A stretch of DNA of 63,011 nucleotides, the filler included, from Octopus bimaculoides (taxonomy: Eukaryota), in the NCBI RefSeq assembly GCF_001194135.2. It is 9 parts of 7 records of this genome, joined end to end, with 100 filler letters (N's around TTAATTAATTAA, not from the genome) between each part and the next. Parts side by side here need not be neighbours in the genome. Positions count along the whole stretch, not along the records: positions 29,576 to 45,075 come from NC_068989.1; 8 more parts are not named here. One strand, 5' to 3'. Below, piece by piece: positions 29,221 to 46,700 of this stretch. Positions within the stretch are counted from its first letter, which is position 1. Each line of letters starts with the position of its first letter. Under the pieces are notes generated by a model that was given only the letters and a program-made list of their open reading frames with translations, did not search any database and was not told the DNA's origin. The translations under genes and the position numbers were made by a program.

Positions 29221-29670
29221 GACTGACAAAGAAAGTGTAGGTTGTTGGATCCTCATACGTCGAAATCGACGGGAGAGTCCATCATGTATGTATAGTGGAG
29301 TCGTCGACGACTAAACTGGCGCCCCGCGAGTGAGGAGGGTTGCTAAAATCACAGTAGGACTAAAAACACAACCTGTCATAGAGATCAAGGGGATCTTTTT
29401 TAAAACGGGGGCCACATTTTTCATTAATGTTTTACGTAGTGTTTTTGGTACCGAAAGACTTTCAAACTTCGTATANNNNNNNNNNNNNNNNNNNNNNNNN
29501 NNNNNNNNNNNNNNNNNNNTTAATTAATTAANNNNNNNNNNNNNNNNNNNNNNNNNNNNNNNNNNNNNNNNNNNNCCTGTATCCATATATGCATGTATGT
29601 ATACATATAGATGTAGGTATGTACATATATGTATGGATATATGCATATATTTATATATTATTTAAGTTAT

Positions 29671-29711
<41 letters not shown>

Positions 29712-30354
29712 GAGAATATACAAATAATAACAACAGACGAGGACAGGTGGTGTAAATAACAAAAGTATATATTAGTATATATATATATATATATATATAT
29801 ATTCATGTATACATTTGCACATGCATGTAGATATGTGTGTTCTCTTCAACTTTTAAATATTTGAAAACTTCCTGTAAGGAAGGAGCTGGTTTCTAGCAAA
29901 AATACGAATTTCCATCATTGGAATGTAGATAACAAAAACTACGTCACATTCAGAACTTGAGAAAAGTTTTCCATATTTCTACTGACTATATGTGTAATGC
30001 GTGAGTTAGCTGGTCGATTTCTTATTCTGAAAGCCCTAGCTGTATGCATGTATCTATGCATGTATATATGCAGGTAAGTAGGTAAGATAGGTAGGTAGGT
30101 AGGTGGGTAGGTAGGTAGGTAGGTAGGTAGGTATGTATGTGGGTAGGTAGGTAGGTAGGTAGGTAGGTAGGTAGGTAGGCAGGCAGGCAGGCAGGCAAGT
30201 AGGCAGGCCGACAGACAGACAGACAGGCAAACATTGGATCTATCTACTCTATTGGGTTGGATAACGCTTCGTGAGTACAAAAATTCCCAATAGACATCAG
30301 TAATTTCGATTACTTCTTTTGTCTAAAATTCATGTTAATATGGAAGTTAATTTA

Positions 30355-30570
30355 AGGGCGGTGAGCAAGCAGAATCGTTAGCACGCCTGGCAAAATGTTT
30401 AGCGGCATTTCATCCGCCTTTACATTCTGTGTTCAAATTCCACCGAGGTCGACTTTGCCTTTCATCCTTTCGGCATCGATAAAATAAGTATCAGTTGAAC
30501 ACTGGGGTCGAGGTAATCGAATTAACCCCTCCCTCGAAATTGCTGACCTGGTGCCTAAATTTGAAACTAA
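30355..30570 (+). mobile_element. tRNA-derived SINE family A, near full length
   Basis: gggcggtgagcaagcagaatcgttagcacgcc...gttcaaattccaccgaggtcgactttgcctttcatcctttcgg. Confidence 0.85.
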
Positions 30571-30833
30571 TGGTTCTTTGAGTATTTCTTTCTTTCTTTT
30601 TTTCCTTTTTGCTTGAACACATATGCCGCTTTTTATCAAGCATGTTACAATAAAACAGAAAATTCATATCGATTTGTTATATTCATTAAATGCATTAGTA
30701 CAAATATATGTACAAATATATTTTGAATCTAATTTTACTGGATCCTAATGAAGTTGAGAAAGAAGTATAGTTAGTGTGATCGAAACTAGGACTCATCTTC
30801 CACACCTAATTGCATTTATTTCACATTCCTTAC

Positions 30834-30904
30834 TTCTCTGATAGTCTTGGGAGAGGTATGAACGTCTCTAATGATGAATTATAAAGCAATTGGCCTATAA
30901 CTAC
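30834..30904 (-). CDS. RGSL1-like: Candidate next coding exon of the RGSL1/RGS22-like gene (VVIGQLLYNSSLETFIPLPRLSE)
   Basis: Acceptor aatatttag, donor gtaagg, open in phase 0 matching the upstream CQP| exon; resembles VFGQ..Y...F...P after the conserved Pro. Confidence 0.5.
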
Positions 30905-33063
30905 CTAAATATTTTGACTAAATGTCTCTTCATCCGTCTTTATAACTGAATTAAACTAGGATTGAAATAAACGATTGATTTTTCAAAAGTTTAGAAAGAA
31001 TACATTTTTAGATTTGGAACTAAGTGTAAACATAAGGGGTTATAATAAGTTTCGGAATCTGGAATTCATTTATATTCACCTCCATTTGTCTTTAATAAAT
31101 ACTTAATATAAACTATATTACGTTCATTTAGTATTAAACAATTCATGTTCAGATTCATGTTCATATCATATGAATAGATATGAATATATCTATTCATATC
31201 TATAGATATGAACAGATATATTTATATCTATTAAATTTAAACATTCACAAAGAAAAGTTAGGAAGGCACAAGCATGCTGATCCATAGGAAAGCTTGACCT
31301 GCGAGAAAAGCAACAAAAGTCCCTACGATCTTAAGTAAGGTATGATAGAAGACGCAGTCTTACTTGACCTTAAAAGCAAATAAAGGTACGGCTGAAATAA
31401 TTATAAAGGTGTGTTTACTCGATCAAGACCTTGAGTGTAAACAAGCGAGATCTAGAATCGGTTATAATATAATATTTGCATTTGAGCAAACTATGTCAGT
31501 ATCTTCATAATACCCGAACAACAATAAATAATCATTTATATCGTTTACTAACTTATTGGGTACACGCAAACTGTAAGAAAATTACCCGCAGCATCTGGAA
31601 GCTTTTAACCGCTTCTGCAATACCTGCAGTCTAAAGATTTTTTAATACTACACAAATTGCAATACAACCTCATCTGTACATCACAATATATACAATGCAA
31701 TAGGCCACTTTACTGTCAATAAACAACACCACTGTATATCACACTTCACCAAACCATGATACAACAGTTTATACATCTAACTTCAACACAGTATAAAGTG
31801 ATATATACTTTTATCTTTACATCCTTACCGAACCGTACAACATACTGGGTCGTCATTACTAGCACCCTCCCTGAGCCGTTATTTGGTATATACACAATCA
31901 TATTTGCCTTATATGCATCACAAAATATATACGCAATACACTATATTATATGTAGTTTCTTACATAACGGTTTATAACCACATTATACACACCATGTACT
32001 ATCCAATATTCTGCAGTATATATACTATAATATATGATGTAAATTACAATACTCGAGAGTATAGAGGACATTTTCGGTGTATTTGAGGAGTGGAAGATGT
32101 GGTGGGATCTCTGTGTACGTTCCCAATGAAGCAATGTTGAAAGGAATAAATTATTCACTGAAATAGTGGCGTACGTATACACAACAATACACCGTTGTCC
32201 TCCACAATATATAGAACACAGCCCATCACAATATAAACACCGCAATACTACAGTATATACATCCCAGTATGATCATCATCACTCAAAGCTGAGACTTGTA
32301 CAGTGAAGTATTCGACTTTACCATACAAATCTAGCGGGCCACGAACAGTTTGTAGAACATTTTAACTTATTTTGTCTCCTTAAAAGTTCTTGTGCTCATT
32401 CATAGCGTAATGCATAAAATATTTGCTTCCTTTTAACCCATGTATACTGTATATTTTAGAAGAATGAAATGGAAGGTTGTATGATGTTGCAGTGTTTTCT
32501 CCTAGAAACAATTAATGAAATGAATGACTTCAAACAAGGAGTGGCATGTCGCAGTTCAGATTGCCAGCAGTAGTTTAGCTACTGCTCCACTATGCTCAAT
32601 CGCTTAAAGTAATTTTGTGAAATACGAATTGCTGCAAAAATATCATTTGTTGAAGACTTATGCATGTTTAATGGTCTGGATATCTTATCGGTGTAAATAT
32701 TTGAACACGCTCGAAAATTATTGAATTTTTTTATCTACATTTTAAAACTCTGCTTTTCTTCCAGGAACTTAGTGTAATTAGTGTCTTGGAAATCAACTCT
32801 AAACAAAACTATTGAGAAAATGTTTTGTTGTGTCAGCTCATGTGTCGAGCTTTTAAAGTTGGTGTGCTTTTGGACAGGAAACGTAGCTCTATTTCCCTTA
32901 CTTACCGTTATAAATAGATATCAAAACTTCAAAATATATTTGTTGTTCTCATGGTTAACTGAATTATGCAATGAGAATATATTCCAACAATTTTAAGCTT
33001 TTAGTATATAAAGATGGCATTAGCAAAAAAGACAAACTATTTTTATTTTTACACAAATTCTCA

Positions 33064-33069
33064 TTTATT
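33064..33069 (-). promoter_or_regulatory. Possible polyadenylation signal AATAAA of the PHM-like gene
   Basis: AATAAA on the minus strand ~80 nt after the stop; the motif is common in AT-rich DNA. Confidence 0.3.
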
Positions 33070-33148
33070 TCTTCGTGAAACTACTCACTATAGTCATTTC
33101 GTAAATTGTTTTTCATCTACCTTTTCCATGTTACTAAAAAAATGCATT

Positions 33149-33371
33149 CTAGTACCTATACGCAGTTTTCGTAACATTAAAAGGCGATAACAACTTTTTA
33201 TAGCCCTCTTTATCTGGAAGTGTTGATTCTTGTGGTAGACGTGCGAAAATGTTATACAAACTTGATTTCTGGGCGTCTCCAGGACAAACGACGTGTTTCT
33301 GTTTCTTGTAAGCATCGAATTTGATACCGTACAAGAAATACATGTCACACATTTCGTCCGAATGGCCGTTA
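33149..33371 (-). CDS. PHM-like: PHM-like last exon (NGHSDEMCDMYFLY...AYRY*), contains the CuM Met
   Basis: Acceptor ctattttag, phase 2 start, TAG at 33149-33151; matches PHM GTSSDEMCNLYIMYY...MFRTIPAEANIP. Confidence 0.9.
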
Positions 33372-35723
33372 CTAAAATAGAAAGTACAAATTATAAACGA
33401 CTGACAATAAATAATTATAGTAAAGATTAATTTCAAATTTTGGCACTAGGCCCGTAGTTCCGGGGAATGGGTGAGTTGATTACATTCGACCCCCTACTTA
33501 TTTTATCGACCCGAGAAGGATGAAAGGCAAAGTCGAACTCAATGGAATTTGAACTCAGTACGTAAAGACGGACGAAATGCCGCTAAGCATTTTCCCCGGC
33601 GTGCTAACGATTCTGCCAGCTTGCAGCCTTCAATTATGGTAAAGATTAAGAATTTTGTGTAATCTCAATATATATCTTATTTTCATGTTTCGCTTTAATA
33701 ATTGCTTATTTGCCGAGGTGGTTTTAATGCATTCCACTTAAATTTATATTCATATTCCATGAGAAAACGTACTTAAAAAGCTTGAAAAATGCCAAGATGG
33801 AAATTTCTATGTTCTTTAGTTTGCCCTTCAATGATCCAGAATTAAAACATGAATCACGTACCGATATTGACGTAATCAATTATACACTTCTCATAATCTA
33901 ATCGATTATACATGTTGTAGATTATGCTACTATATGGAATCTATGTCGTCAATAATGATATCATTACTGGATTAAATGTATTACAGTTAATGCGATAATG
34001 ATTATAACATATATGATCTGGTACTGATCATATATGTCTAATTATCTAATAAATGAATAATATTTCTGTTTTAATTGTAGTACTAAACAAATTAATGAAA
34101 ACAAAGGTATTTCAGTTAACTTGTTCAGTGAATGTCTGCTACACATGATGATATTCATAGTTTCTCCTACAGCAATTGTTAACTCGATTAACATCATTTT
34201 ATCATCATTTTATCATCATTTTATCAATAAAAATTGAATAAATGCAGCTGCCTAGCAGCAAACAAGTGAAGGTATCGGAACGATGCTTTCACTATTCATG
34301 ACTGCGTGGTTTGCAATCCCGCCTCTCACTTAAGTCATTAGCAAAAGATTTGTTGATTTAGTCACATGATGATAAGTAAATTCTTTCACAAATGTCAGCT
34401 TCTGGATATGATTCAAAACGAATGTAGTTAAAATTTAAAAATAAAATAAGCTACAATAATATAGTTAGAAAGTTTTAACAAAATTTAACACAATATAGCA
34501 ACAATATACTAAATTTTACATAATCCAAAGATTATTATAATCCAGTTTCATTCATGGGTGAGTGGATAATTCGCCACCATTCTGTCTCAGAGGGTCGTCC
34601 ATTACCATGATTCACCTTTGTTTGAGATATTTTATTAGCATTGTATTTCTATTAGATTCTTTAGACTGTAACCGCACTAAAATAATTACATTCATTAACC
34701 ATAAGGTACCACTTTTTGGTGAATAGCTCTAAGTTGTTCCAATCTGCATTGTATGTTAGAACTCTGGCAGATTTATACACCATATCCAGCATTTAGTTAA
34801 CTGGAAAAACGAAAACCAATACCTTATATAACTTACTTCAATTGTCAATTCGTAATATTTCAAATTATAATAAAGAAAAATAAATGCGCCCTTTTAAAAC
34901 CTATCCAGGATCATGGGCTCGGTTTCCCGGTTTCAATGGCGTATGTGTTCCCCGGCTGGACGGGACACCAGTCTATCGCAGCGTTACTCATTTTTGCCAG
35001 CTGAGTGGACTGGAGCAACGTGAAATGAAGTGTTTTGCTCAAGAACACTATGCGTCGCCCGGTTCAGGAATCGAAACCACAATCTTACGATCATGATGCT
35101 GACACCCTAACCATCAAGCCACGCGCCTCCACATTTCAAATTATAGTATTATCAAAATCCTGTAACAATAAACAGGTTATTGTTCCAACAGTTAGATTTT
35201 ATATAGTGTTATGTGGGATACTTACCCAAAATTAACATCCCATCTATTCGGGTTGGTTAATGTACAGCGCATTATCTGCAATAAATGATAATTATGCGTT
35301 AGATATTTTGAAGTTCATAAATAATAGTTTTCTCTGAAAAAACAACGCATTATGATAGAGATAATACTTGAATTTCTATGCTCATATTTCGTGTTCACTT
35401 TTTGGCAATATACAAGTGTACAGTAATCCCTCGACTATTGCGGGTGTTACGTTCCAAAATCCACCGCGATAGGTGAAAATCTGCGAAGTAGAAACAGTAC
35501 TGTATATTTTTTATTAGTATTATTTTTATAATTTGCATATATTTATCTTATTATAAATACAAAACAACACCACGAAGTAATTAACGTAAGCTTCAATAAT
35601 AAACCGCGATAGGTGAACCATGATATGGGGAGGGATTACTGTATATGTACATACATGCATGCATACATACATGTGTGTGTGTATATATATATATATACAT
35701 GTATACATACACACATATATATA

Positions 35724-35782
<59 letters not shown>

Positions 35783-36034
35783 TTGCGTATGTGTATGATG
35801 TGGATTCTGTGAAAGGTGTGAATGGTTAAACGTTTATGCATAGATTTTTTCTGGGGTTAGTTCTTTGCGTTGGTGTGGTTGCGCGCGCCTTGGAAGAGGC
35901 TGGCCATATTACAAGTTTATGACTCTTCATCTTTCATTCTAATAACGCAAGAGAATAAATGATTTATCAAGCAATGTACTATAATTCACACACATATATG
36001 CAAAGCACATAAACGTACACGCGCACGCGCACGC

Positions 36035-36087
<53 letters not shown>

Positions 36088-37261
36088 CGCAAAGCATGAG
36101 GACATTTATGCAATCTATTTATCATCTATCTTTCTAACTAGCTGCATAGATGTGTATGTATACATATATCTATACGATTTACTGAAATTTTGTGATTGAA
36201 ATAAATAAAACTAAATAGAAAATTAAAATTAGAATTGGAGATATAAAGACTCCCTTGTTGATTCGAGATTATTGTACAAGGATAGTATAAGCCATTCAAT
36301 AATCATTAATATATTTCTGCTACTTATGGCGGCGAGCAGGCAGAATCGTTAGCACGCTGGAAAAATGCTTAGCAGCATTTCGTCCGTTTTTACGATCATA
36401 TTTCACCGAGGTCGACACTGCCCATCATCCTTTCGGGGTCGTTAAAATAAGTATCAGTTGAGCACTGAAGTGGATGCATATAGTGTTATTTCATAATCTG
36501 AAATAACACCAATACCTTCAAACAAGAGGAGGACATATTAAATAACTGGATAAGCTTAAAGAATTGAATGGTCAAGACTAAAATTGCCATTTTATCATTA
36601 AGCTTTATTAGTCATGGCTCATCAAGTGTTAAACAGCAAAAACAATTGCAAAAGGAAGAAAATTTTAGCCAACCAGTTGTGATTTAACTGAGATAAGAAC
36701 AAAATGGGATAAAAGACAATCATTTCTCTAAGTAACAAATCAACTTTGCGGCATTTTTCAGACTTCATTGTCGTGATTGAACAGGGAAGGACATAACTCA
36801 CTAAAAATTGATGGACTGCTTTAATATTAGAAATATAAAAAAAAATTATATCGAAATATTAGCAGAAGAATACTTTTACAGCTCCTATGCAATGTCTGGT
36901 GAAACCGCAGTTGCTACAAAGAAAGTATATCTAAACACTGACTGTCTGCTGTTATTTTTAAATTATTTACTTCAACAGGAAGACAAACATAACTGATTGC
37001 TTACCAAAATATCGGTGCTTTGTAATGTTATATTCCGAGAAGAAATGTCGATCGTTACCTAGAAAGTAAATGTAAAGTAAAACATATAGCAAATATGATT
37101 CAGGATAGATGGACGATTAGTTCTATGTGTGTAAATATATACATACATACATACATACATACACATTTTAAAATATTAAAAGTGAGAGAAGTCATGCTTC
37201 TTCATTCATATTCGAACACGCTTCTAATCTGTTGCTCGGCCGATAGCGGCAAAGATATATA

Positions 37262-37301
<40 letters not shown>

Positions 37302-37728
37302 NNNNNNNNNNNNNNNNNNNNNNNNNNNNNNNNNNNNNNNNNNNNNNNNNNNNNNNNNNNNNNNNNNNNNNNNNNNNNNNNNNNNNNNNNNNNNNNNNNN
37401 NNNNNNNNNNNNNNNNNNNNNNNNNNNNNNNNNNNNNNNNNNNNNNNNNNNNNNNNNNNNNNNNNNNNNNNNNNNNNNNNNNNNNNNNNNNNNNNNNNNN
37501 TTATTGAATGTGTTACCTAGAATTCAATAACACTATAAAAAGAGACAGCCTCCCAAGGTGAAATCAAAATTTTAAAACCCTACTAGACTAGGTGAAAGCG
37601 CTAATTTACAAAACATGTGACATATGAATAAAAATCTGTAAATATACAACCATCCAGACATCTGAGTACCTGATTATCATTTTTTCGAATATATAACTCC
37701 TGTACATCACCTCCAAACATTCCAATAT

Positions 37729-37795
<67 letters not shown>

Positions 37796-39075
37796 TAGTT
37801 TAAAAAACCAAACTCCATGCGAGTTGAATGGCCGTTGTTTTTAAATAAAACAAGGGCATTTTTAACTGCTCTTCTCCCAATTCTACAGAATGAAACGCCT
37901 TTGTCAGATCAATAAAAACTTAATATAAATCCAGATCTTCATATCTTGTTCGATGCACGTTCCTTGTAGCCATCTAGCTGAAAATATCATATTCCTAGTA
38001 CTCTTATCGCCTCTAAACCCTCATTGTAATTCTGGTAAAACCTCATTACCAATGTGCAGATGCAATCCACCCAGTATTAACCTACAAAGTATGTTTCCAG
38101 TCACAGCTAACAGACAGATGCCACGAAAACTATCGCAGACATTCTTTCCGCCTTTCGATTTATAGAGTATCTCCATAATCGCATCACGCCAATCCTGAGG
38201 GACCACTTCGCTGTGCCAAATCCTCTGAATCACGCCTGTCAACATTGTACAGAGGTATTCACCACCATATTTATATATTTCTGCACCTAACCCAAACATA
38301 CCAGGGGCTTTTCCATTGTTCAATTTCACGATAGCCGCTTTTATTTCAGCCAGGTTTAGAACCTCGACTAAAAAAGGTTTTGTTGGTCTTTCTGGTATAT
38401 TATCAAGAACAAAGAGGTTAACTTCGGCGGGTCTATTGAGTAACTCATCAAAGTGCTCTTTCCATCTCCCAACAAGTGAAGCAACCGTTGATGAAGTTAA
38501 ACTATAAACTTTTTCAAGAGAGAAAGTAAAAAAGTTCTGAATTGTTAGCGTTTGAAGTTTCTACACCACAAATTTTACATACATACATGCAAACATACAT
38601 ACATGCAAACATACATACATGCAAACATACATACATGCAAACATACATACATACATATACATACATATATACATGCTACATGCATCTCTCTTTCCTTTCC
38701 CGAGTGTCTAGTAACACTATCCGTATCACGTCCTCACGTTGTTGTTTTTTGTTATTGTTTTTTGTCTTTTTTTTAACTTATATATATAATCCTTTATATA
38801 TTTAATCCTTTATACTGAACACTCAATATTTCATATATTCAATAAGACATATTCCATATATTCAATAAGACATTCAATACTTCATTTCATTGTACCATCC
38901 ATTTTTATATTATATATTGTATATTCCATATTCTATATCCCACATTAATTTTACAAGAATATAAATAAAACATAAAAAAACAGACAGAGTTGGAACTCTT
39001 TTAAATAATATATATATTCCTCTATACACAATCATACAAAACCCCTTTTTTGTATTTATTTTTACTCACACACAC

Positions 39076-39110
<35 letters not shown>

Positions 39111-42100
39111 CATATTACACACACACACACACGCACACACACATATACACTCAGTGTTACTCATAATGATGATGATGATGAACATGATGAAGATGGTGAG
39201 GGCATGTACGAATGCATATTAAATGTTGACGGCGTATATTAACCGTACTTTAAATGCCATATGCAATTTAACATATAGTTATTTTGGAATGTGTGTGACT
39301 TACTTCTGGGTAAGAGGGGTCTGCTCGGAGTAGCTCGATGAACTGGTTATTTCGATAAATATAACCAGTGATTGCTGTAGCTAAAACAAATAGTACAAAA
39401 ATACATATTTGAAAAATATTCTAAGTGGATGTCAAAATATCACTTTTATTAATGTCGTTACAAAATCAAAATCAAGTCTGCTAATAAAAACTCGGTTTTA
39501 TGATTTTAAAAAAAATTTAAATAGCCAGTTTATTAAAAGCTTTCTCGACATAGAGGATCATTGTTTATAATCAACACTTACCCATTTTGTGAGAATGGAT
39601 AGATAAACCATGCAGTAGCGTATTGTCAAATGGCCATCGACAAAATGCGTCTGCTGTGAAGTCTATAAAACGAAAAAGAATTCTTTAAATTCATTCTGAA
39701 AGATTATAGATATTATTTGTTACCTAGATACACATGATCAAAAATAGTTGAATAGTTAGGATGCCAGATTTGCAACTGATGTTCGAGTATTTACAACCCG
39801 CTACAAGATACACACTGTATTCGTATTCATAACCATAGTACACGCAAGGACAATATGGTGAGGTTGAACCGGGAAGTGACTGTGACTCTCCACACCACTT
39901 AGATAAAAAAAAAAAAAAAGGTGGGGGTGACTGTTTATATATCAACTATTTGCAAGTATATCGAGATATGATGCTATGTTGTTTTGTGTCAAGATACTAC
40001 AATGTGATCTATCTGAAATAACATTGTTAAAAACATTCGGTTCTTCAGATGTGCTTCACATCCAAATAGATCAGAGATTTCTCTGAAGATGACTACTAGT
40101 ATTCCTAAAATATATTGCTTATATAACACATTTTATTCAATAGTGTAAATAAAAATTGGTTCTTTTGATAATTTTAACAAATGTTCCTAAAACATTATAA
40201 ATGTAATGTGATTGTAAATGTTCGAACATGCACAAAATTAATGTCATAGAATTCTTACCTTTTGTATTAGCAGGAATATATCCGATAATGCCATAAATGG
40301 CTATATCTGACCGATAGGTAGGTCTAGAAATGAAATAATATATTTTATGATATTCTCATGTTAAATATAAGGAAATGTTATTTGTTTGTGTAAAAACATT
40401 ACATTGCCAAACTTACTTTCTGTCAGTGAGTCCGATCCGAATTCCAGTGCTATTAAAGGACGAGGTACTTTCAACTCGAAAATGAAAAGAAATTTCAGAA
40501 TACAGCCCACAGTTTTATGAAAATGAGATATGCATTTGAATATTACCATTGTTATCATTTATCGAGCATATTAAGGTATGTCTTGTATGCTTATTTGTAC
40601 CCTAAACAATTACAAGAGTATATCAATCTTTAAGTCTACATTGGTATATAACTACACAAGGGCTATAATGCAACCGATCAAAATATTGCAATACTTTTAC
40701 TTAAAATAAAATTTACAAACAAATGCACAACCGATTTACAAATTGTTCAGGGTTCTCCAAAGAAAGATTAGGTATAGTGGATGTAGGCATTAAGTGGTTT
40801 TTATCCATTTTGCAATTATCTCAATTAGGATTAGCCGTACATAACGAATATCCAGTATAATTCGGGCTCGTTGCATCCGCAGGAGTTTAGGTCACTTGTT
40901 TGAAACCATGTCGCCGATTCACATTTTGAATTATACATATTTGACAACACAAATAAACCGTTTCAGATTCGGAGAGTCAAGAGAGGTGATCTGAAAGAAA
41001 TCTTCTAGAAAATTAGAAGAATCTGTCGTATGCTGTAAAAGATTTTACTGAACATTGCAATAACTGTACAGAATGTAGAGTATCGGGCAACAAGATACCC
41101 CATTGTGAATGATTTAACTTTCTTTAACTTTCATTGGCTAATTTAATGCAGTTTCAGATAAGACCATTATAATTTTGGCATTACGAGTCATCAAAAAGTC
41201 TATGTGACATCATCCGTTAAGTAGAAACGGCTATTTAGGGATTGTTTCAACTTGCTGAACACGGAACAGCCCACTCCTTGGTGCTACTTTCGAATAAAAT
41301 AAGTGATGAATAAGGCACTTGCTAATAATAGAAGCCTTGATATCACTGCATTGATTGACGAATGGAAAACGAGAAATACAAGCAACATATTTGATTAGTT
41401 AGAACAAAGAAATAGTTCTTGAGTTCGTTGATAAGTATACAAACGTATGGATAGCTTTTATGAAAGAAATATCTTTTGGATGATATAAGTTACGTTTAAT
41501 TTTATTCCTTAAGTAGTAATTGGAGCAAACTGGGCGTAATTCTTAGAGAGAAAAGAGATTACGTACTTTTATCAAAGGAAGACTTCTTACACTCAAGTGT
41601 ACTAAAGAATTATGTATTAATTTTAAATTCATAGCAGTTTAAATAGTAGTATGTATTATAATATTGTATGGTAGATGGTGAGTAACTATTCTCCGAGCCA
41701 AATGTAAAGTTTATAGTGTTAGGGAAGAAACCTCTGTTCTATGTGTTGTGTCGAAACCCCCCAAGCGAAGAAGTAGGATCGCCTAAGACATATAAATAGA
41801 GGTAGTCTGGCCGTGGTAGGGTTGAGTAGCTGACGAGGAGCAGTCGAGTAGCGGTTGAGTAGAGATCATCCGAAGGTGCTAGATAGCAGTAGCTTGAGAC
41901 ATAACACTATGGCATAGGACGTTTATACTTTTTTTACCACGGTTTTCATAGTCAAACATGAGTGAAATGAATATTTGATGTCTCAGTAAACTATGTTTTG
42001 GGAAGAAAGATTTTTATAGCTTCCGTAATTGTATAAATATGCTTCTCTTTTGTCAATATGGTAAGTGTTAAATTTTTTTCGGTATTATTTAAGGATGTTA

Positions 42101-43379
42101 TGAAAAATACACCTGATCTGCATCCTTCTAGCAATGCTATGAAAATTGTTTCTTGACTAGTATAATTTTTGTCAGAGGGGAAAGCAAACCATTATGGATG
42201 GTGTTGATGATCTTTACAGAACTGATATATTTTTAGTAAGAGAAATATTTCACTGTTTATTTTTTTAAATATGAGAAAGAATCCACTTGATGTAGTACCA
42301 AAAGAAACCAAGTAACAGCAACAGCTGTAATTCTTTATCATTTCAAGGTATAGATAACTCTTCAGTTTGCATTTCAACTTACCTTAGATAACAATAACCG
42401 CTTAATTTGAAGGATAAATCAATTTATCGTATCTCTCCGCATATAATCTTTTCTATTTACTTAAACCTATCCTCTCTAACATCGTGAGAAGTTCACTGTG
42501 AACGTTAATTCGAGAGCATCCATTTAACGCTATTTAATCAATACACACATGTAAGCCTTTTTTGTTTAACGTCATAAGTTAAGTTTTTTTTCTTATCTAT
42601 CACTGTCTAATTAAAAACCACACTTGACCAGGCTTTGAAAGTACACTTTCTATTTAACTATTTAGGTTATAATACAACCAAGCCGGACGATATTTACACT
42701 TCTGGTATAAGAGATGATAAAAGTATCATGAGGAACATATTGCACATCCATATTCCTTACAATTTCATACAATCAGTAGTAATGATGTAGAATAGATGCA
42801 CCAGGTGACAACACTAGTGACAGTTAACGTGATTCACTGAACACATGTTGTGACATGCAGTTTTGTTTCATATATTCGTTAAAATTTGTTCCACTGAAGA
42901 AATACAGAAATTAGGGAATTTCAGAAAGAAAGAATTACTACAATGAAGAAAGTCGGTAAAAGTATCCATGATACCCTCGACAAATGCATGCTGTGGAACA
43001 GACCGTTACAGTATGTATTTCCTCAAACTTGATTTCAGGCTAAGGAAATACAACAGAGAATAAAGAACATCAGATAGAAAGGCTTTTATTTTGTTAAAGA
43101 AGCCGCCGCTATTAAATGGAACAATTCCAGACAAAATGTCAGCAACATTAAGTTACAATACTTTATATTTTGACTTCAAACCATGCCGAGGCTAACCTGG
43201 CATTTCATCACTTGGATAGATAAAATGAAGTACAAATTAAATGCTGATATCGTTGTATATATCTGTAATGAATGCTTTGTGTGTATAGAGATGACGATAA
43301 TACTCACGTGTCATATTTGGTGGAGCGTGGACCTGCACAACAAGGTACCGCTTCTTAGATCCTACTGGGATTGCGAATT
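33149..43379 (-). CDS. PHM-like: Divergent PHM-type (copper type II ascorbate-dependent) monooxygenase, 8 C-terminal exons, 5' exons unresolved
   Basis: All seven junctions are GT-AG and phase compatible. Spliced product: FAIPVGSKKRYLVVQVHAPPNMTLESTSSFNSTGIRIGLTDRKPTYRSDIAIYGIIGYIPANTKDFTADAFCRWPFDNTLLHGLSIHSHKMATAITGYIYRNNQFIELLRADPSYPEVTIDISSRNITLQSTDILIMRCTLTNPNRWDVNFGNGHSDEMCDMYFLYGIKFDAYKKQKHVVCPGDAQKSSLYNIFARLPQESTLP...AYRY*. Confidence 0.9.
33445..33630 (-). mobile_element. SINE family A in a PHM-like intron
   Basis: Reverse complement of the family A consensus. Confidence 0.8.
34885..35132 (-). mobile_element. tRNA-derived SINE family C, full length
   Basis: Minus strand gtggaggcgcgtggcttgatggttagggtgtc...gtttcgattcctg head with A/B boxes. 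Confidence 0.85.
35226..35275 (-). CDS. PHM-like: PHM-like exon (IMRCTLTNPNRWDVNFG)
   Basis: Acceptor atttattgcag, donor gtaagt, phase 0 to 2; matches AARCVFTGEGRTEATHIG. Confidence 0.88.
35421..35641. mobile_element. Tc1/pogo (Tigger-like) MITE
   Basis: TA-CAGTAATCCCTCG ... GGAGGGATTACTG-TA. Confidence 0.85.
36325..36470 (+). mobile_element. SINE family A
   Basis: ggcggcgagcaggcagaatcgttagcacgc...cctttcggggtcgttaaaataagtatcag. Confidence 0.75.
37005..37058 (-). CDS. PHM-like: PHM-like exon (VTIDISSRNITLQSTDIL)
   Basis: Acceptor tttactttctag, donor gtaagc, phase 0 to 0; aligns to AFYPVEHPVDVTFGDIL. Confidence 0.85.
38020..38510 (-). mobile_element. RTE (BovB-like) LINE reverse-transcriptase fragment
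   Basis: KLNNGKAPGMFGLGAEIYKYGG...VPQDWRDAIMEILYKSKGGKNVCDSFRGICLLAVTGNIL. Confidence 0.9.
39304..39380 (-). CDS. PHM-like: PHM-like exon (TAITGYIYRNNQFIELLRADPSYPE)
   Basis: Acceptor atttgttttag, donor gtaagt, phase 1 to 0; ungapped to KVVSGYRVRNGQWTLIGRQNPQLPQ. Confidence 0.9.
39582..39662 (-). CDS. PHM-like: PHM-like exon (FTADAFCRWPFDNTLLHGLSIHSHKM), CuM His-x-His
   Basis: Acceptor tttcgttttatag, donor gtaagt, phase 1 to 1; matches VNADISC...FAYRVHTHHL. Confidence 0.9.
40259..40323 (-). CDS. PHM-like: PHM-like exon (PTYRSDIAIYGIIGYIPANTK)
   Basis: Acceptor tttcatttctag, donor gtaaga, phase 2 to 1. Confidence 0.85.
40417..40474 (-). CDS. PHM-like: PHM-like exon (ESTSSFNSTGIRIGLTDR)
   Basis: Acceptor ttttcattttcgag, donor gtaagt, phase 1 to 2; aligns to DCSGVSVHLTR. 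Confidence 0.8.
41744..41906 (+). mobile_element. 163-bp solo LTR (TRIM-sized)
   Basis: TGTTGTGTC...GACATAACA inverted ends, perfect 5-bp TSD CTATG (41739-41743, 41907-41911), internal TATAAATA. Confidence 0.8.
43308..43379 (-). CDS. PHM-like: PHM-like exon (FAIPVGSKKRYLVVQVHAPPNMT), CuH His172 equivalent
   Basis: Acceptor gcaataag, donor gtgagt, phase 1 to 1; matches GFRVGGETGSKYFVLQVHY. Confidence 0.82.
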
Positions 43380-43478
43380 CTTATTGCAAACATATTGATA
43401 AAAATATGCAAATTACAAAAACATTTGAGGCATAGATTAGATCAATTAAAATAAAATAATTTTCAAGTTGGGGTTATG

Positions 43479-43601
<123 letters not shown>

Positions 43602-43688
43602 TACACACACACACACACATATACAGGTAGATAGAGAAAGAGAGACAGAGACACTAAGAAATGAAAGAAAATTACAAGATTTTGTGTG

Positions 43689-43724
<36 letters not shown>

Positions 43725-46700
43725 CATGTATATATGTATACATGTATTAATCCATACAAGCACACCTATACTTCCCACATATATCCTAACTAGCACAGTA
43801 TCAGGAGAGAAAGATAATATAATAACGTAAAATGATAAAGGTTTTAATCAGTAGTGCCACATGCTAGGAATAGACGCCAACTGGCTCTAAGAACTAAATT
43901 ATTTACCCCATTAGCACGGGTTGAAAGCGAGGAACGTAAACAAAGATTTTTTAAACGGTTTAACTATAGGTCAATTTCTAGTTTGGAGATGCAAAATCTC
44001 TTTACCGTCATCAGTATAGTATAACACATTGTACATAATTATAAACATTTATACATACCCATACGAATAACCCGCATTCACAAGCGCATATACAAATATT
44101 CACATTTATATACATGCTACATCTAATTCATTCACCTCAACCACGTGCGTATACGACCAAATATAATACTGGAGAGAATATATTAGTATATAAACGTGAA
44201 CATTTGTATATGGAAAAAAAACTCAACGTCATTAAAAGTGACTAAGGGTGTATGGCAGCACCAGCATTGCTAGAAATAAGACTCAAAGACTCTTTAGCCA
44301 TGAACAAGTATAGTCCTATGTACTGACAAGGGAGACAACCTCCCCATAGCATGCAAAATCATCAGATTGGTACGCCAATTTCGCATGAAATTAATGCTCA
44401 TTAGAGATGCTAGTCTGTTGCTCGTGGTGAAACTGAATTCCACTTGTCAGTATTCATAATATTTACCATAGGTATCAATAGCTGATTCAGTAAAATGGAA
44501 ATGGGAAAATTATAAAATCGTTAAGGTGGCTAGACGCAATAGTATATGCTGACATACACTTCCTATATAAATTTACAAATAAATACATAGATATAGTTAT
44601 TGTATAAGCACATATGTGCATTTGTATATGTTGGTGACTGTAGATTCCTTCAAAAGTCGATATTGAAACATATTGAACCATTTAAAAACATTAATTTAAA
44701 AACATTCCTTAAGTCTCCAGACCTGTCCTGGAGACTTAAGGAAGGCAGAGTGCAATACAACATCACATAAACGATCATAGAAACGCATATCCATATAATA
44801 CGTTCTCAAGTTCTTGCAGTCTCTATTCCGAAGAAGTTCTATGCATTATAAGGAGTGAAGATACACTTGTAAACAGGTACCCCGAAAGAGTTATAAGATG
44901 CAACTGCAAAATAAAACGTTCATTTTCGCAGTTATGTAACGATAAATAACGTTTGAACCTCTATCCATTCGACATACTTCAATCTTTCTCTCTCGGTCAT
45001 ATTGTATGTATTTGTCTCGGGTTTTTAAAAATAGTTAAGTGTATGTGAGAAGAATATACACCAGTGTGCATATATNNNNNNNNNNNNNNNNNNNNNNNNN
45101 NNNNNNNNNNNNNNNNNNNTTAATTAATTAANNNNNNNNNNNNNNNNNNNNNNNNNNNNNNNNNNNNNNNNNNNNTTTACCACTCCAGCACAAATTTTCT
45201 TTAATTTCCCTCCGCTCATGCTGTGAATTGCGAGCATGGCCTTTGACATGTGGGCGTGAACACTATTAATGCACATCCCCTTTTTTGATGTGCACATTAG
45301 TGTTTACTAACCCCACCCCCTATTACTTATGCCCTCCCACTTCAGCTTCTTATTTGGTGTGAGTGACTGCTTTTACTACGTCCCTAGTGTTTATCCACTT
45401 CCCCTCACCATTATCGCCGACTGTCATAATGCCCCCTTTCCACCACCCTCTTCCTTAATGACATTATGTCAACGGTCTGCCAATAAGAGGTGAACTGTGA
45501 ACATGACCATTGACCTATGCTCGTGAACACTATTGTTTTTCTACTGTAATGAGCCCGTCCAATCAATTCTCTGACTGAATTTCATTGGTGGAACACTGTT
45601 CACCTGATCATACCAGTGTCAAATCGTAATTATTCATGCGCGTTTGTGCATATCTGATACGTGGTTCGGCTTACAAGTTTGGCCTAACATTTGACGTACA
45701 TTATTGCTTTGTTGAAATTTTTCGTCGTTCCCATACTCAATTAAGTTAACTCCTTCACACTGTTGCCGCCTACCAGTTTTTAGCTTACATGTCATTTAAG
45801 AGTACTGTATTCAGTGACTTTATGTCCACATAGTTAGCTGTCTGAAATGTGTGGAGTTCTACTGTAGTCTTGTTTCAAAGTTACTAACCTTCCTCAGCCA
45901 TGTTTCATTTCCTTTGTCCAACCTGTTTGTAATCTGTTTTCACAGAGTTTCACATTTCGTAGCAACAGTTCCGTTGCTTTCGGTGTAAACGAAACAAAGG
46001 CCCTATTCAGAGTCATTTTACATACGATTGATACATCACCTGGGAACGCATTACAGCCCCTTTCAGGGCTACCACACCCGTGATTGTTACACCGTCTGGG
46101 AACACATCAAAACCCTTCTCAGGACTTCGTATCAAACTGTTACCACTTGGCTTCAGCGGTATATATATATATATATATATATATACGTGTGTGTGTGTGT
46201 GTGTGTGCCAGAAAGTAGCATAGGCTAGAGTGGGGGAGGGGCGGGGAGCGATAAATGAGATTAGTAGCCCCGTTATCTACATATCGAAAACAATAGGGAG
46301 AATGTTGTCTTCAAAACATCAAAAATTAGATGTTTAGGAAGTTATAAGTTAATTAGTATCATGACAGACCGTTCTACTGTCTGAGAAAATGAAACTTTAC
46401 ATCCGGCTATATCAACACCAAAAGGATAGGTCATGAAGTGGTAAACGAGAATGTCTGATGGGCGAGTGGTGATATCAGAAAAAGAGAAGTGGGGACAGGG
46501 ATGGCCAATAAAGCATATTTTGATTGTCATCTTAAAGGGTAGGAAAAAGTGAACTGCCAAAACGAATACCTCTTAAAGGATTATGGGTGGAATATAAATT
46601 GAAGCAGTAAGTTTTAACCTTAGTTTACGTATACCGTTAAAGCAAAATGCAAATATATAAATATATAAAGGCTAGAAAGAAATTTCAGAATTAACTAGAT

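What the first reader, a model, noticed from the sequence alone, without database searches (positions are those of the whole stretch)
33149..43379. Divergent PHM-fold copper monooxygenase with intact metal sites but a rewired substrate pocket
Seen: the spliced product aligns without gaps to rat PHM (recalled) over residues 240-273. It keeps Q170, H172, H242, H244, M314, Y318 and the Cys equivalents of the C227-C334 and C293-C315 disulfides. It changes R240 to S, N316 to D, Q272 to E and Y173 to A. Known: R240 binds the carboxylate of the C-terminal Gly and N316 binds the substrate amide in PHM. Inference: likely still a copper enzyme but not a standard peptide-amidating one, with a possible new substrate. 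Four N-glycosylation sequons (NMT, NST, NIT, NVT) fit a secreted or luminal protein. None of this is visible in the ORF track.
Basis: partly seen in the sequence, partly recalled or inferred. Interest (0 to 1): 0.85.

Follow-up and report, generated by a model that had tools for sequence, protein, structure and literature searches.

The report
Divergent octopus PHM-like copper protein gene
This is the 3' two-thirds of an already annotated Octopus bimaculoides gene for a secreted relative of the peptide-amidating copper enzyme PHM; it belongs to an unstudied mollusc-wide side branch that keeps the oxygen-activating copper site but has lost the residue that grips peptide substrates and, in cephalopods, one histidine of the second copper site.

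Summary
Eight minus-strand exons (43379..33149, all AG/GT) splice into residues 14-238 of NCBI model XP_014772774.1 (Octopus bimaculoides). The assembly gap lies in an intron and hides no exon.

HMMER alignment to solved rat PHM confirms the following:
- Kept: Q170, H172, H242, H244, M314, Y318, C227, C293 and C315.
- Changed: Y173A, R240S, Q272E and N316D.

- Metal sites are not all intact. The exon for H107/H108 lies outside the piece. In the annotated full-length isoform H107 is Asn, and it is Arg in O. vulgaris and O. sinensis.
- The gene is not unique. It belongs to a strongly supported, mollusc-wide clade of about 335-residue secreted stand-alone PHM-like proteins (chiton, bivalves, abalone, octopus). 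These coexist with canonical PHM.
- The clade keeps five of six copper ligands in every member. It loses R240 in 13 of 14 members and Y173 in all 14.
- Q272E also occurs in canonical PHMs. N316D is restricted to one cephalopod subclade.

The gene is not a pseudogene, but it evolves fast (dN/dS 0.68 against O. vulgaris). Most likely it is a secreted copper protein that no longer hydroxylates peptidyl-glycine. Its substrate is unknown.

The parts
43308..43379 (-). First exon inside the piece (72 nt): (E)FAIPVGSKKRYLVVQVHAPPNMT. It carries Q170, the CuH ligand H172, A173 and the NMT sequon. Acceptor ...caataag|AA, donor C|gtgagt (phase 1).
40417..40474 (-). Exon (58 nt): LESTSSFNSTGIRIGLTDR. The NST sequon sits where PHM has C186, so the C47-C186 disulfide is absent.
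40259..40323 (-). Exon (65 nt): KPTYRSDIAIYGIIGYIPANTK, the interdomain linker and the start of the C-terminal domain.
39582..39662 (-). Exon (81 nt): DFTADAFCRWPFDNTLLHGLSIHSHKM. It carries the C227 equivalent, S at the R240 position, and CuM ligands H242 and H244.
39304..39380 (-). Exon (77 nt): ATAITGYIYRNNQFIELLRADPSYPE. It ends in phase 0 with E at the Q272 position; donor gtaagt.
37302..37500 (.). Assembly gap (199 N), flanked by TA/TG microsatellite, inside the intron between the previous and next exon. No coding sequence is lost.
37005..37058 (-). Exon (54 nt, phase 0 to 0): VTIDISSRNITLQSTDIL, with the NIT sequon.
35226..35275 (-). Exon (50 nt): IMRCTLTNPNRWDVNFG, with the C293 equivalent.
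33149..33371 (-). Last coding exon (223 nt): NGHSDEMCDMYFLYG...SPFNVTKTAYRY*. It carries CuM ligand M314, C315, D at the N316 position, Y318, the family-invariant Cys that pairs with C227, the NVT sequon and the stop TAG at 33151-33149.
33042..33069 (-). Two AATAAA hexamers 80-105 nt downstream of the stop. This is a plausible polyadenylation signal (inference only).

Best explanation
Shown: the window holds the last eight coding exons of an annotated Octopus bimaculoides gene (XP_014772774.1 / XP_052826668.1). Its product is a roughly 335-residue stand-alone two-domain PHM-fold protein with no PAL domain, DOMON domain or membrane anchor. The O. vulgaris orthologue carries a signal peptide. 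It belongs to a mollusc-wide paralogue clade that exists beside canonical PHM.

Shown: the clade keeps H108, H172, H242, H244 and M314 in every member. It has lost R240 and Y173 and replaced I306 by Phe. Cephalopod members have also lost H107 (Asn here). This subclade has Asp for N316.

Inferred mechanism: the protein still binds copper at the CuM site and probably at a two-His CuH site. It no longer docks a peptidyl-glycine C-terminus. If catalytic, it uses CuM-bound oxygen on a substrate that has no free alpha-carboxylate. That substrate could be neutral or cationic, given S240, D316 and E272. It may also be a secreted macromolecule. Electron supply would run through a weakened CuH site.

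The substrate and the level of activity are unknown.
For: Gene identity and exon structure.

Fold: Pfam; HMMER against PHM chains at E about 1e-26, against DBH at 1.6e-5; AlphaFold2 model of the O. vulgaris orthologue with pLDDT 91.4 and Foldseek TM 0.72-0.83 to PHM structures.

Clade:
- 100% NJ bootstrap.
- Named members are chiton, scallop, ark clam, unionids, abalone and Octopus.
- The same species also have a canonical PHM.

Residue pattern:
- 32 of 32 canonical domains keep H107, R240, Y173, N316 and Y318.
- The clade keeps five of the six Cu ligands in 14 of 14 members.
- It loses R240 in 13 of 14 and Y173 in 14 of 14.

Literature and comparison:
- R240 is the salt-bridge partner of the substrate carboxylate (PMC12164859).
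- Human DBH, which hydroxylates an amine, also lacks R240 (Gln) and N316 (Val) at the aligned positions.

Constraint:
- No frameshift in 675 coding nt, where about 5.8 indels are expected from the intron rate (P about 0.003).
- Related intron-free transcript contigs of about 1.1-1.4 kb give dN/dS of about 0.1, with dS saturated.
Against: - Single H107A, H108A or H172A mutants of rat PHM keep at most about 5% activity (PMC12164859; PMC6123673). A natural N107 or R107 protein may therefore be a very poor catalyst.
- Position 107 differs even between Octopus species (N against R).
- Pocket positions 240, 316 and 318 vary freely across the clade. This fits loss of a defined pocket as well as it fits a new substrate.
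- dN/dS against O. vulgaris is 0.68 and is not significantly below 1 (P=0.17).
- I found no transcript of the O. bimaculoides protein itself in the contig index.
- There is no biochemical or expression data and no literature on the clade.
Confidence: 0.5

Rival explanations
1. Pseudoenzyme or copper-binding protein. The fold and most ligands are kept for structure or metal binding (for example copper handling, or a binding role in a secreted matrix), but the protein no longer catalyses hydroxylation.
For: - The H107 ligand is lost and the replacement is not conserved: N, R, K or L.
- CuH single mutants of PHM are at most about 5% active.
- Substrate-contact positions 240, 316 and 318 drift across the clade.
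- Protein evolution is fast: 80% identity at dS 0.10, dN/dS 0.68.
Against: - H108, H172, H242, H244, M314, D312 and C315 are invariant in 14 of 14 clade members spanning chitons to cephalopods. That is hard to explain without a working dicopper or CuM chemistry.
- Basal members keep all six ligands.
- Long-term purifying selection is seen in related transcripts.
Confidence: 0.3
2. An ordinary peptidylglycine alpha-hydroxylating monooxygenase, as the automatic annotation says, with other residues compensating for R240 and H107.
For: - NCBI names it PAM/PHM-like.
- Its best structural and sequence match is PHM.
- Y318, Q170 and the CuM site are kept.
Against: - R240, N316, Y173 and H107 are invariant in 32 of 32 canonical PHM domains from cnidarians to vertebrates, and all four are changed here.
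- In other molluscs the canonical PHM is a separate gene in the same genomes.
- The clade is separated with 100% bootstrap and long branches.
Confidence: 0.1
3. A decaying gene (pseudogene) in O. bimaculoides.
For: - dN/dS of 0.68 is not significantly below 1.
- The exon mismatch rate (7.3%) is close to that of alignable introns (7.7%).
- The NCBI isoforms lack a proper signal peptide.
- No exact transcript is on record.
Against: - The reading frame is open through all eight exons, with canonical splice sites.
- There are no frameshifts where about 5.8 indels are expected (P about 0.003).
- All conserved Cys and the remaining ligands are intact.
- The orthologue is intact in O. vulgaris and O. 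sinensis.
Confidence: 0.04

Closest known systems
Peptidylglycine alpha-hydroxylating monooxygenase (PHM, catalytic core of PAM; rat structures 1PHM/1OPM/1SDW)
   Same: - Two beta-sandwich domains (Pfam PF01082 and PF03712).
- Foldseek TM 0.72-0.83.
- CuM ligands H242, H244 and M314, and CuH ligands H108 and H172.
- Q170, D312, Y318, and four of the five disulfides.
- A secreted or luminal protein.
   Different: - H107 is Asn (Arg in sister species).
- R240 is Ser, N316 is Asp, Y173 is Ala, I306 is Phe, and M109 is Ile.
- The C47-C186 disulfide is lost.
- Only about 25% identity.
- No PAL partner domain.
- Fast evolving.
Canonical stand-alone mollusc/lophotrochozoan PHM (e.g. Patella, Lottia, Haliotis, Mizuhopecten, Aplysia PHM)
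   Same: - Same size class (about 340-375 aa), with a signal peptide and no PAL domain.
- A shared C-terminal tail motif (C..DAQ..H/W...P.D/ES).
- The divergent clade groups next to these proteins in the NJ tree, with weak support (38%).
   Different: The canonical proteins keep the complete PHM signature. They are 50-70% identical to each other, but only about 28% identical to the octopus protein.
Dopamine beta-hydroxylase / tyramine beta-hydroxylase / MOXD1
   Same: - The same copper monooxygenase superfamily.
- Like the octopus protein, human DBH lacks Arg at the R240 position (Gln) and Asn at the N316 position (Val), as expected for a substrate without a carboxylate.
   Different: - The octopus protein has no DOMON domain and no C-terminal dimerisation domain.
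- The sequence match is far weaker (E 1.6e-5 against 1e-25 for PHM; TM about 0.6).
- The DBH region I aligned (the CuM half) has the HTH and M motifs. Its CuH residues were not examined here.
Engineered PHM variants H107A (6ALV, 5WJA) and Q272E (8DSL)
   Same: They carry single changes that the octopus protein carries naturally. In the sequence search the best-scoring PDB chain is the Q272E variant.
   Different: These are laboratory mutants of an otherwise canonical enzyme. H107A is nearly inactive but still binds two coppers.

Membership tests
PHM (peptidylglycine monooxygenase, EC 1.14.17.3) | Two-domain Cu2_monooxygen plus Cu2_monoox_C fold | tested here: met
   - Pfam PF03712 E=1.5e-15 for the window product.
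- Both domains score above cut-off in the full-length orthologue.
- AF2 model with Foldseek TM 0.72-0.83 to PHM.
PHM (peptidylglycine monooxygenase, EC 1.14.17.3) | CuM site: H242, H244, M314 | tested here: met
   All three are present in the window-encoded exons and invariant in the clade.
PHM (peptidylglycine monooxygenase, EC 1.14.17.3) | CuH site: H107, H108, H172 | tested here: not met
   H172 (in the window) and H108 are present. H107 is Asn in isoform X1 (P0164, exon outside the piece) and Arg in O. vulgaris and O. sinensis. It is His in 32 of 32 canonical domains.
PHM (peptidylglycine monooxygenase, EC 1.14.17.3) | Peptidyl-Gly docking residues R240 (carboxylate salt bridge), N316 and Y318 | tested here: not met
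   R240 is Ser and N316 is Asp; Y318 is kept. All three are invariant in 32 of 32 canonical domains. The role of R240 is taken from PMC12164859. The roles of N316 and Y318 are from my own recollection of the 1OPM structure.
PHM (peptidylglycine monooxygenase, EC 1.14.17.3) | Ascorbate- and O2-dependent hydroxylation of C-terminal glycine | not testable with these tools
   This needs a recombinant enzyme assay.
DBH / TBH / MOXD1 | N-terminal DOMON domain before the catalytic core, and closest similarity to DBH-type sequences | tested here: not met
   - In the 338-aa orthologue the catalytic core follows the signal peptide directly.
- Pfam finds only PF01082 and PF03712.
- DBH E=1.6e-5 against PHM 1e-25; TM 0.60-0.62.
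Mollusc divergent PHM-like clade (defined here) | Groups with chiton, bivalve, abalone and octopus PHM-like proteins. Has a non-Arg at 240, a non-Tyr at 173 and Phe at 306. Keeps H108, H172, H242, H244 and M314. | tested here: met
   NJ bootstrap 100% for the clade and 100% for its cephalopod part. Residue table. Species names.

The most novel reading that the evidence does not exclude
A mollusc-wide clade of secreted PHM-fold copper enzymes has switched from peptidyl-glycine to a different substrate class that has no free carboxylate. Candidates include an amine such as tyramine or dopamine, or residues in a secreted matrix protein. Its cephalopod members would work with only two His at the electron-transfer copper site. 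That would be a natural case in which H107, essential in mammalian PHM, is dispensable.
Probability: 0.25. Interest if true: 0.7.

Novelty: new variant of a known kind. Interest (0 to 1): 0.45.

Why it matters
PHM, DBH and TBH are the textbook non-coupled dicopper monooxygenases. All six copper ligands and the R240/N316/Y318 docking triad are treated as invariant in PHM.

A clade conserved from chitons to octopus breaks that pattern. It keeps the CuM site, drops the docking arginine, and loses H107 in several lineages. That gives a natural test of two questions: what the CuH site needs, and how substrate specificity is set in this fold.

It would also correct a systematic misannotation, since these proteins are all named PHM or PAM in mollusc genomes. 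For octopus biology it is a fast-evolving secreted copper protein of unknown role.

The caveat is that all of this rests on sequence inference. The gene model itself is not new.

Tried and rejected
- I used a recalled rat PAM sequence only as a lead for tblastn. It found three exons and differed from the PDB sequence at one residue, so I replaced it with the sequence printed from PDB.
- I first read exon 6 (37058-37005) in the wrong frame and considered a CAG acceptor at about 33402 for the last exon, which would give 'SFIICTFYF...'. The database protein and its orthologues refuted both.
- The exons upstream of 43379 (H107/H108 and MSKDAPGWHLPK) are not in the piece: tblastn finds nothing in 43380-45075. 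In O. vulgaris the nearest upstream exon is 2.8 kb away.
- Rfam and tRNA scans of the piece found nothing.
- Pfam gave no hit on the intronic RT-like ORF.
- Literature searches found nothing on this clade. I searched octopus plus peptidylglycine, shell matrix, cephalopod, the protein accessions and the SRR run ids. The only lead is a Cu2_monooxygen protein (PU1) in the Pinctada prismatic shell matrix. It is 53.6 kDa and is not shown to belong to this clade.
- I could not identify the canonical Octopus PHM/PAM within the capped searches.
- Amino-acid replacements between the two Octopus species are mildly enriched on the CuM-bearing strands (10 of 33 replacements in 36 of 220 positions, P=0.03). 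I chose the regions after seeing the data, so I give this little weight.
- Paralogue B is not in tandem. It lies 51 Mb away on the same chromosome in O. vulgaris.
Full report
WHAT IS THERE

The piece (29576-45075) is 33% G+C and rich in microsatellites, with one 199-N gap. Stop-free segments on the minus strand contain PHM-like peptides.

A protein search with a draft splice product returned P0001 = XP_014772774.1, 'peptidyl-glycine alpha-amidating monooxygenase-like isoform X2 [Octopus bimaculoides]'.

Eight exons, all with AG acceptors and GT donors, translate exactly to residues 14-238 of that protein, ending at TAG 33151-33149:
- 43379-43308
- 40474-40417
- 40323-40259
- 39662-39582
- 39380-39304
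- 37058-37005
- 35275-35226
- 33371-33149

The exons further upstream are not in the piece. These include the exon that would carry H107/H108.

THE GAP

The gap at 37302-37500 lies in the intron between exon 5 (ends in phase 0 with ...SYPE) and exon 6 (VTIDISS...).

- The whole piece, introns included, is colinear with the O. vulgaris orthologous locus L001 at 80-97% identity.
- The blocks on either side of the gap map 263 bases apart in O. vulgaris, with no exon between them.
- Orthologues and more distant relatives read ...YPE|V/PxIDIS... without extra residues.

The coding sequence is therefore continuous and in frame across the gap.

CHECK OF THE RESIDUES

HMMER alignment of the O. bimaculoides product (P0164) and of the O. 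vulgaris orthologue (P0002) to solved rat PHM chains gives E about 1e-26.

- Kept: Q170, H172, H242, H244, M314, C315, Y318, C227 and C293.
- Changed: Y173A, R240S, Q272E and N316D.
- The alignment is ungapped over residues 240-273.

I fixed the numbering on the PDB sequence itself. The four sequons are in the translation.

Pfam finds Cu2_monoox_C in the window product and both domains in the full-length orthologue. An AlphaFold2 model of the orthologue has pLDDT 91.4 and pTM 0.88. It matches PHM structures at TM 0.72-0.83 and DBH at about 0.6.

The longer NCBI isoform of the same gene (P0164, XP_052826668.1) reads ...HTINHISTVIC... where rat PHM reads ...DTVHHMLLFGC.... H107 is therefore Asn.

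O. vulgaris and O. sinensis have Arg at this position. I confirmed this in O. vulgaris genomic DNA. M109 is Ile.

The CuH site thus has two of its three histidines. In rat PHM, single H107A, H108A or H172A mutants still bind two coppers but keep at most about 5% activity (PMC12164859; PMC6123673).

THE FAMILY

An exhaustive HMMER search found 378 relatives. It gave a graded series of close hits. The named ones are:
- chiton (Liolophura);
- scallop (Mizuhopecten);
- ark clam (Tegillarca);
- unionids (Potamilus, Sinanodonta);
- abalone (Haliotis);
- two Octopus paralogues, A (this gene) and B (XP_014770957.1).

In a neighbour-joining tree these proteins form one long-branched clade with 100% bootstrap. 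The octopus sequences and three unnamed transcript assemblies form a 100% subclade within it.

The same bivalve and abalone species also have a canonical stand-alone PHM. The clade is therefore a paralogue, not the mollusc version of PHM.

In O. vulgaris, paralogues A and B are 51 Mb apart on one chromosome.

RESIDUE PATTERN

In 32 canonical PHM domains, from cnidarians to vertebrates, these positions are all invariant: H107, H108, Q170, H172, Y173, R240, H242, H244, D312, E313, M314, C315, N316 and Y318.

The 14 clade members compare as follows (wider table):
- H108, H172, H242, H244, D312, M314 and C315 are kept in every member.
- Y173 is lost in all 14.
- R240 is lost in 13 of 14; abalone keeps it.
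- I306 is Phe in 13.
- Q272 is Glu in 11.
- H107 is kept in the chiton, scallop and unionid proteins and in two unnamed members. It is Lys, Leu, Arg or Asn in the others.
- N316D occurs only in cephalopod subclade A.
- Y318 varies (Y, N, H, L, E, S).

Q272E also occurs in proteins that are otherwise canonical, so it is not diagnostic.

Human DBH acts on an amine. At the aligned positions it has Gln for R240 and Val for N316. Loss of these two residues therefore matches what a family member looks like when its substrate has no carboxylate.

SELECTION

Against O. vulgaris, over 219 codons:
- dS = 0.10, dN = 0.070 and dN/dS = 0.68.
- There are 14 synonymous and 34 non-synonymous differences.
- This is not significantly below neutral (P = 0.17).

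The exon mismatch rate (7.3%) is about the same as in alignable introns (7.7%).

Those introns carry 84 gap openings in 9.8 kb. About 5.8 indels would therefore be expected in the coding part, and no frameshift is seen (P about 0.003). The frame is under constraint, and the gene is not a pseudogene.

Two related intron-free transcript contigs are 69% identical in protein. They give pN 0.19 against a saturated pS of 0.72, which indicates long-term purifying selection.

Protein identity between the Octopus species is 80% for paralogue A and 87% for paralogue B. Both evolve fast.

INTERPRETATION

Shown:
- The product is a stand-alone PHM-fold protein. Its O. vulgaris orthologue has a signal peptide.
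- It belongs to a distinct mollusc clade.
- Its CuM site is intact.
- Its CuH site is reduced to two His.
- The carboxylate anchor is lost.

Inferred:
- It is not a peptide-amidating enzyme.
- Five of six copper ligands are invariant from chitons to octopus, which argues that copper chemistry is still the selected function.
- The loss of R240, together with acidic D316 and E272 near CuM in this subclade, would suit a neutral or cationic substrate.

Equally open: the free drift of positions 107, 240, 316 and 318 may mean the cephalopod proteins are poor catalysts or pseudoenzymes.

I found no paper on this clade in the searchable library. A Cu2_monooxygen protein in the Pinctada shell matrix is only a lead.

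VERDICT

The 'intact metal sites' claim fails outside the window. The feature is a clade trait of an already annotated gene rather than a singular find. Interest is moderate.

Noticed in passing
window 38024-38560 (minus strand), continuing to about 37900: A 179-codon open frame inside the intron between exons 5 and 6 looks like the N-terminal part of a non-LTR retrotransposon reverse transcriptase (...NNGKAPG...IWHSEVVPQDWRDAIMEILYKSKGGKNVCDSFRGICLL...). That identification is from my own recollection; Pfam gave no hit. The same insertion is present in the O. vulgaris intron at 87% identity, so it predates the split of the two species.
   Followed up: partly
window 30348-30590, 33406-33636, 36328-36467: There are three copies (77-82% identical, two orientations) of a 150-240-base interspersed repeat. 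The O. vulgaris locus holds more than ten copies. One copy ends about 35 bases upstream of the last exon's acceptor. ARAGORN and Rfam found no tRNA or known RNA family in it.
   Followed up: partly
window 37100-37301 and 37501-37800; also 35600-36130, 38560-38780, 39060-39220, 43450-43800, 29576-30250: Long TA/TG/CA-type microsatellites and (TACC/TGCC)-like repeats produce many spurious open frames (YIYIYI, CVCVCV, LPTYLPTY). The assembly gap sits inside one of these tracts.
   Followed up: no
related proteins P0005 and P0155 (Logan transcript assemblies, species unknown): Two otherwise identical 337-residue relatives differ only at A265T, E274Q, N277D and S279Y. The last three are PHM positions 313, 316 and 318 on the CuM strand: DEMCNFS against DQMCDFY. 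This could reflect alleles, recent paralogues with gene conversion, or a chimeric assembly. It hints that the pocket residues are variable within a species.
   Followed up: partly
proteins P0001 and P0164 (NCBI models of this gene): Neither O. bimaculoides isoform has the signal peptide seen in O. vulgaris and O. sinensis (MVISTVFLWLSLCCIVTTFA...). X2 starts inside the N-terminal domain and X1 starts with MHPIPAHRNNN. The 5' end of the O. bimaculoides gene model is probably incomplete.
   Followed up: no
PDB search results: The best-scoring solved chain for the octopus proteins is 8DSL, the engineered Q272E variant of rat PHM, because the octopus protein naturally has Glu at that position. The review read reports that this variant crystallises in a more open interdomain conformation.
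   Followed up: partly
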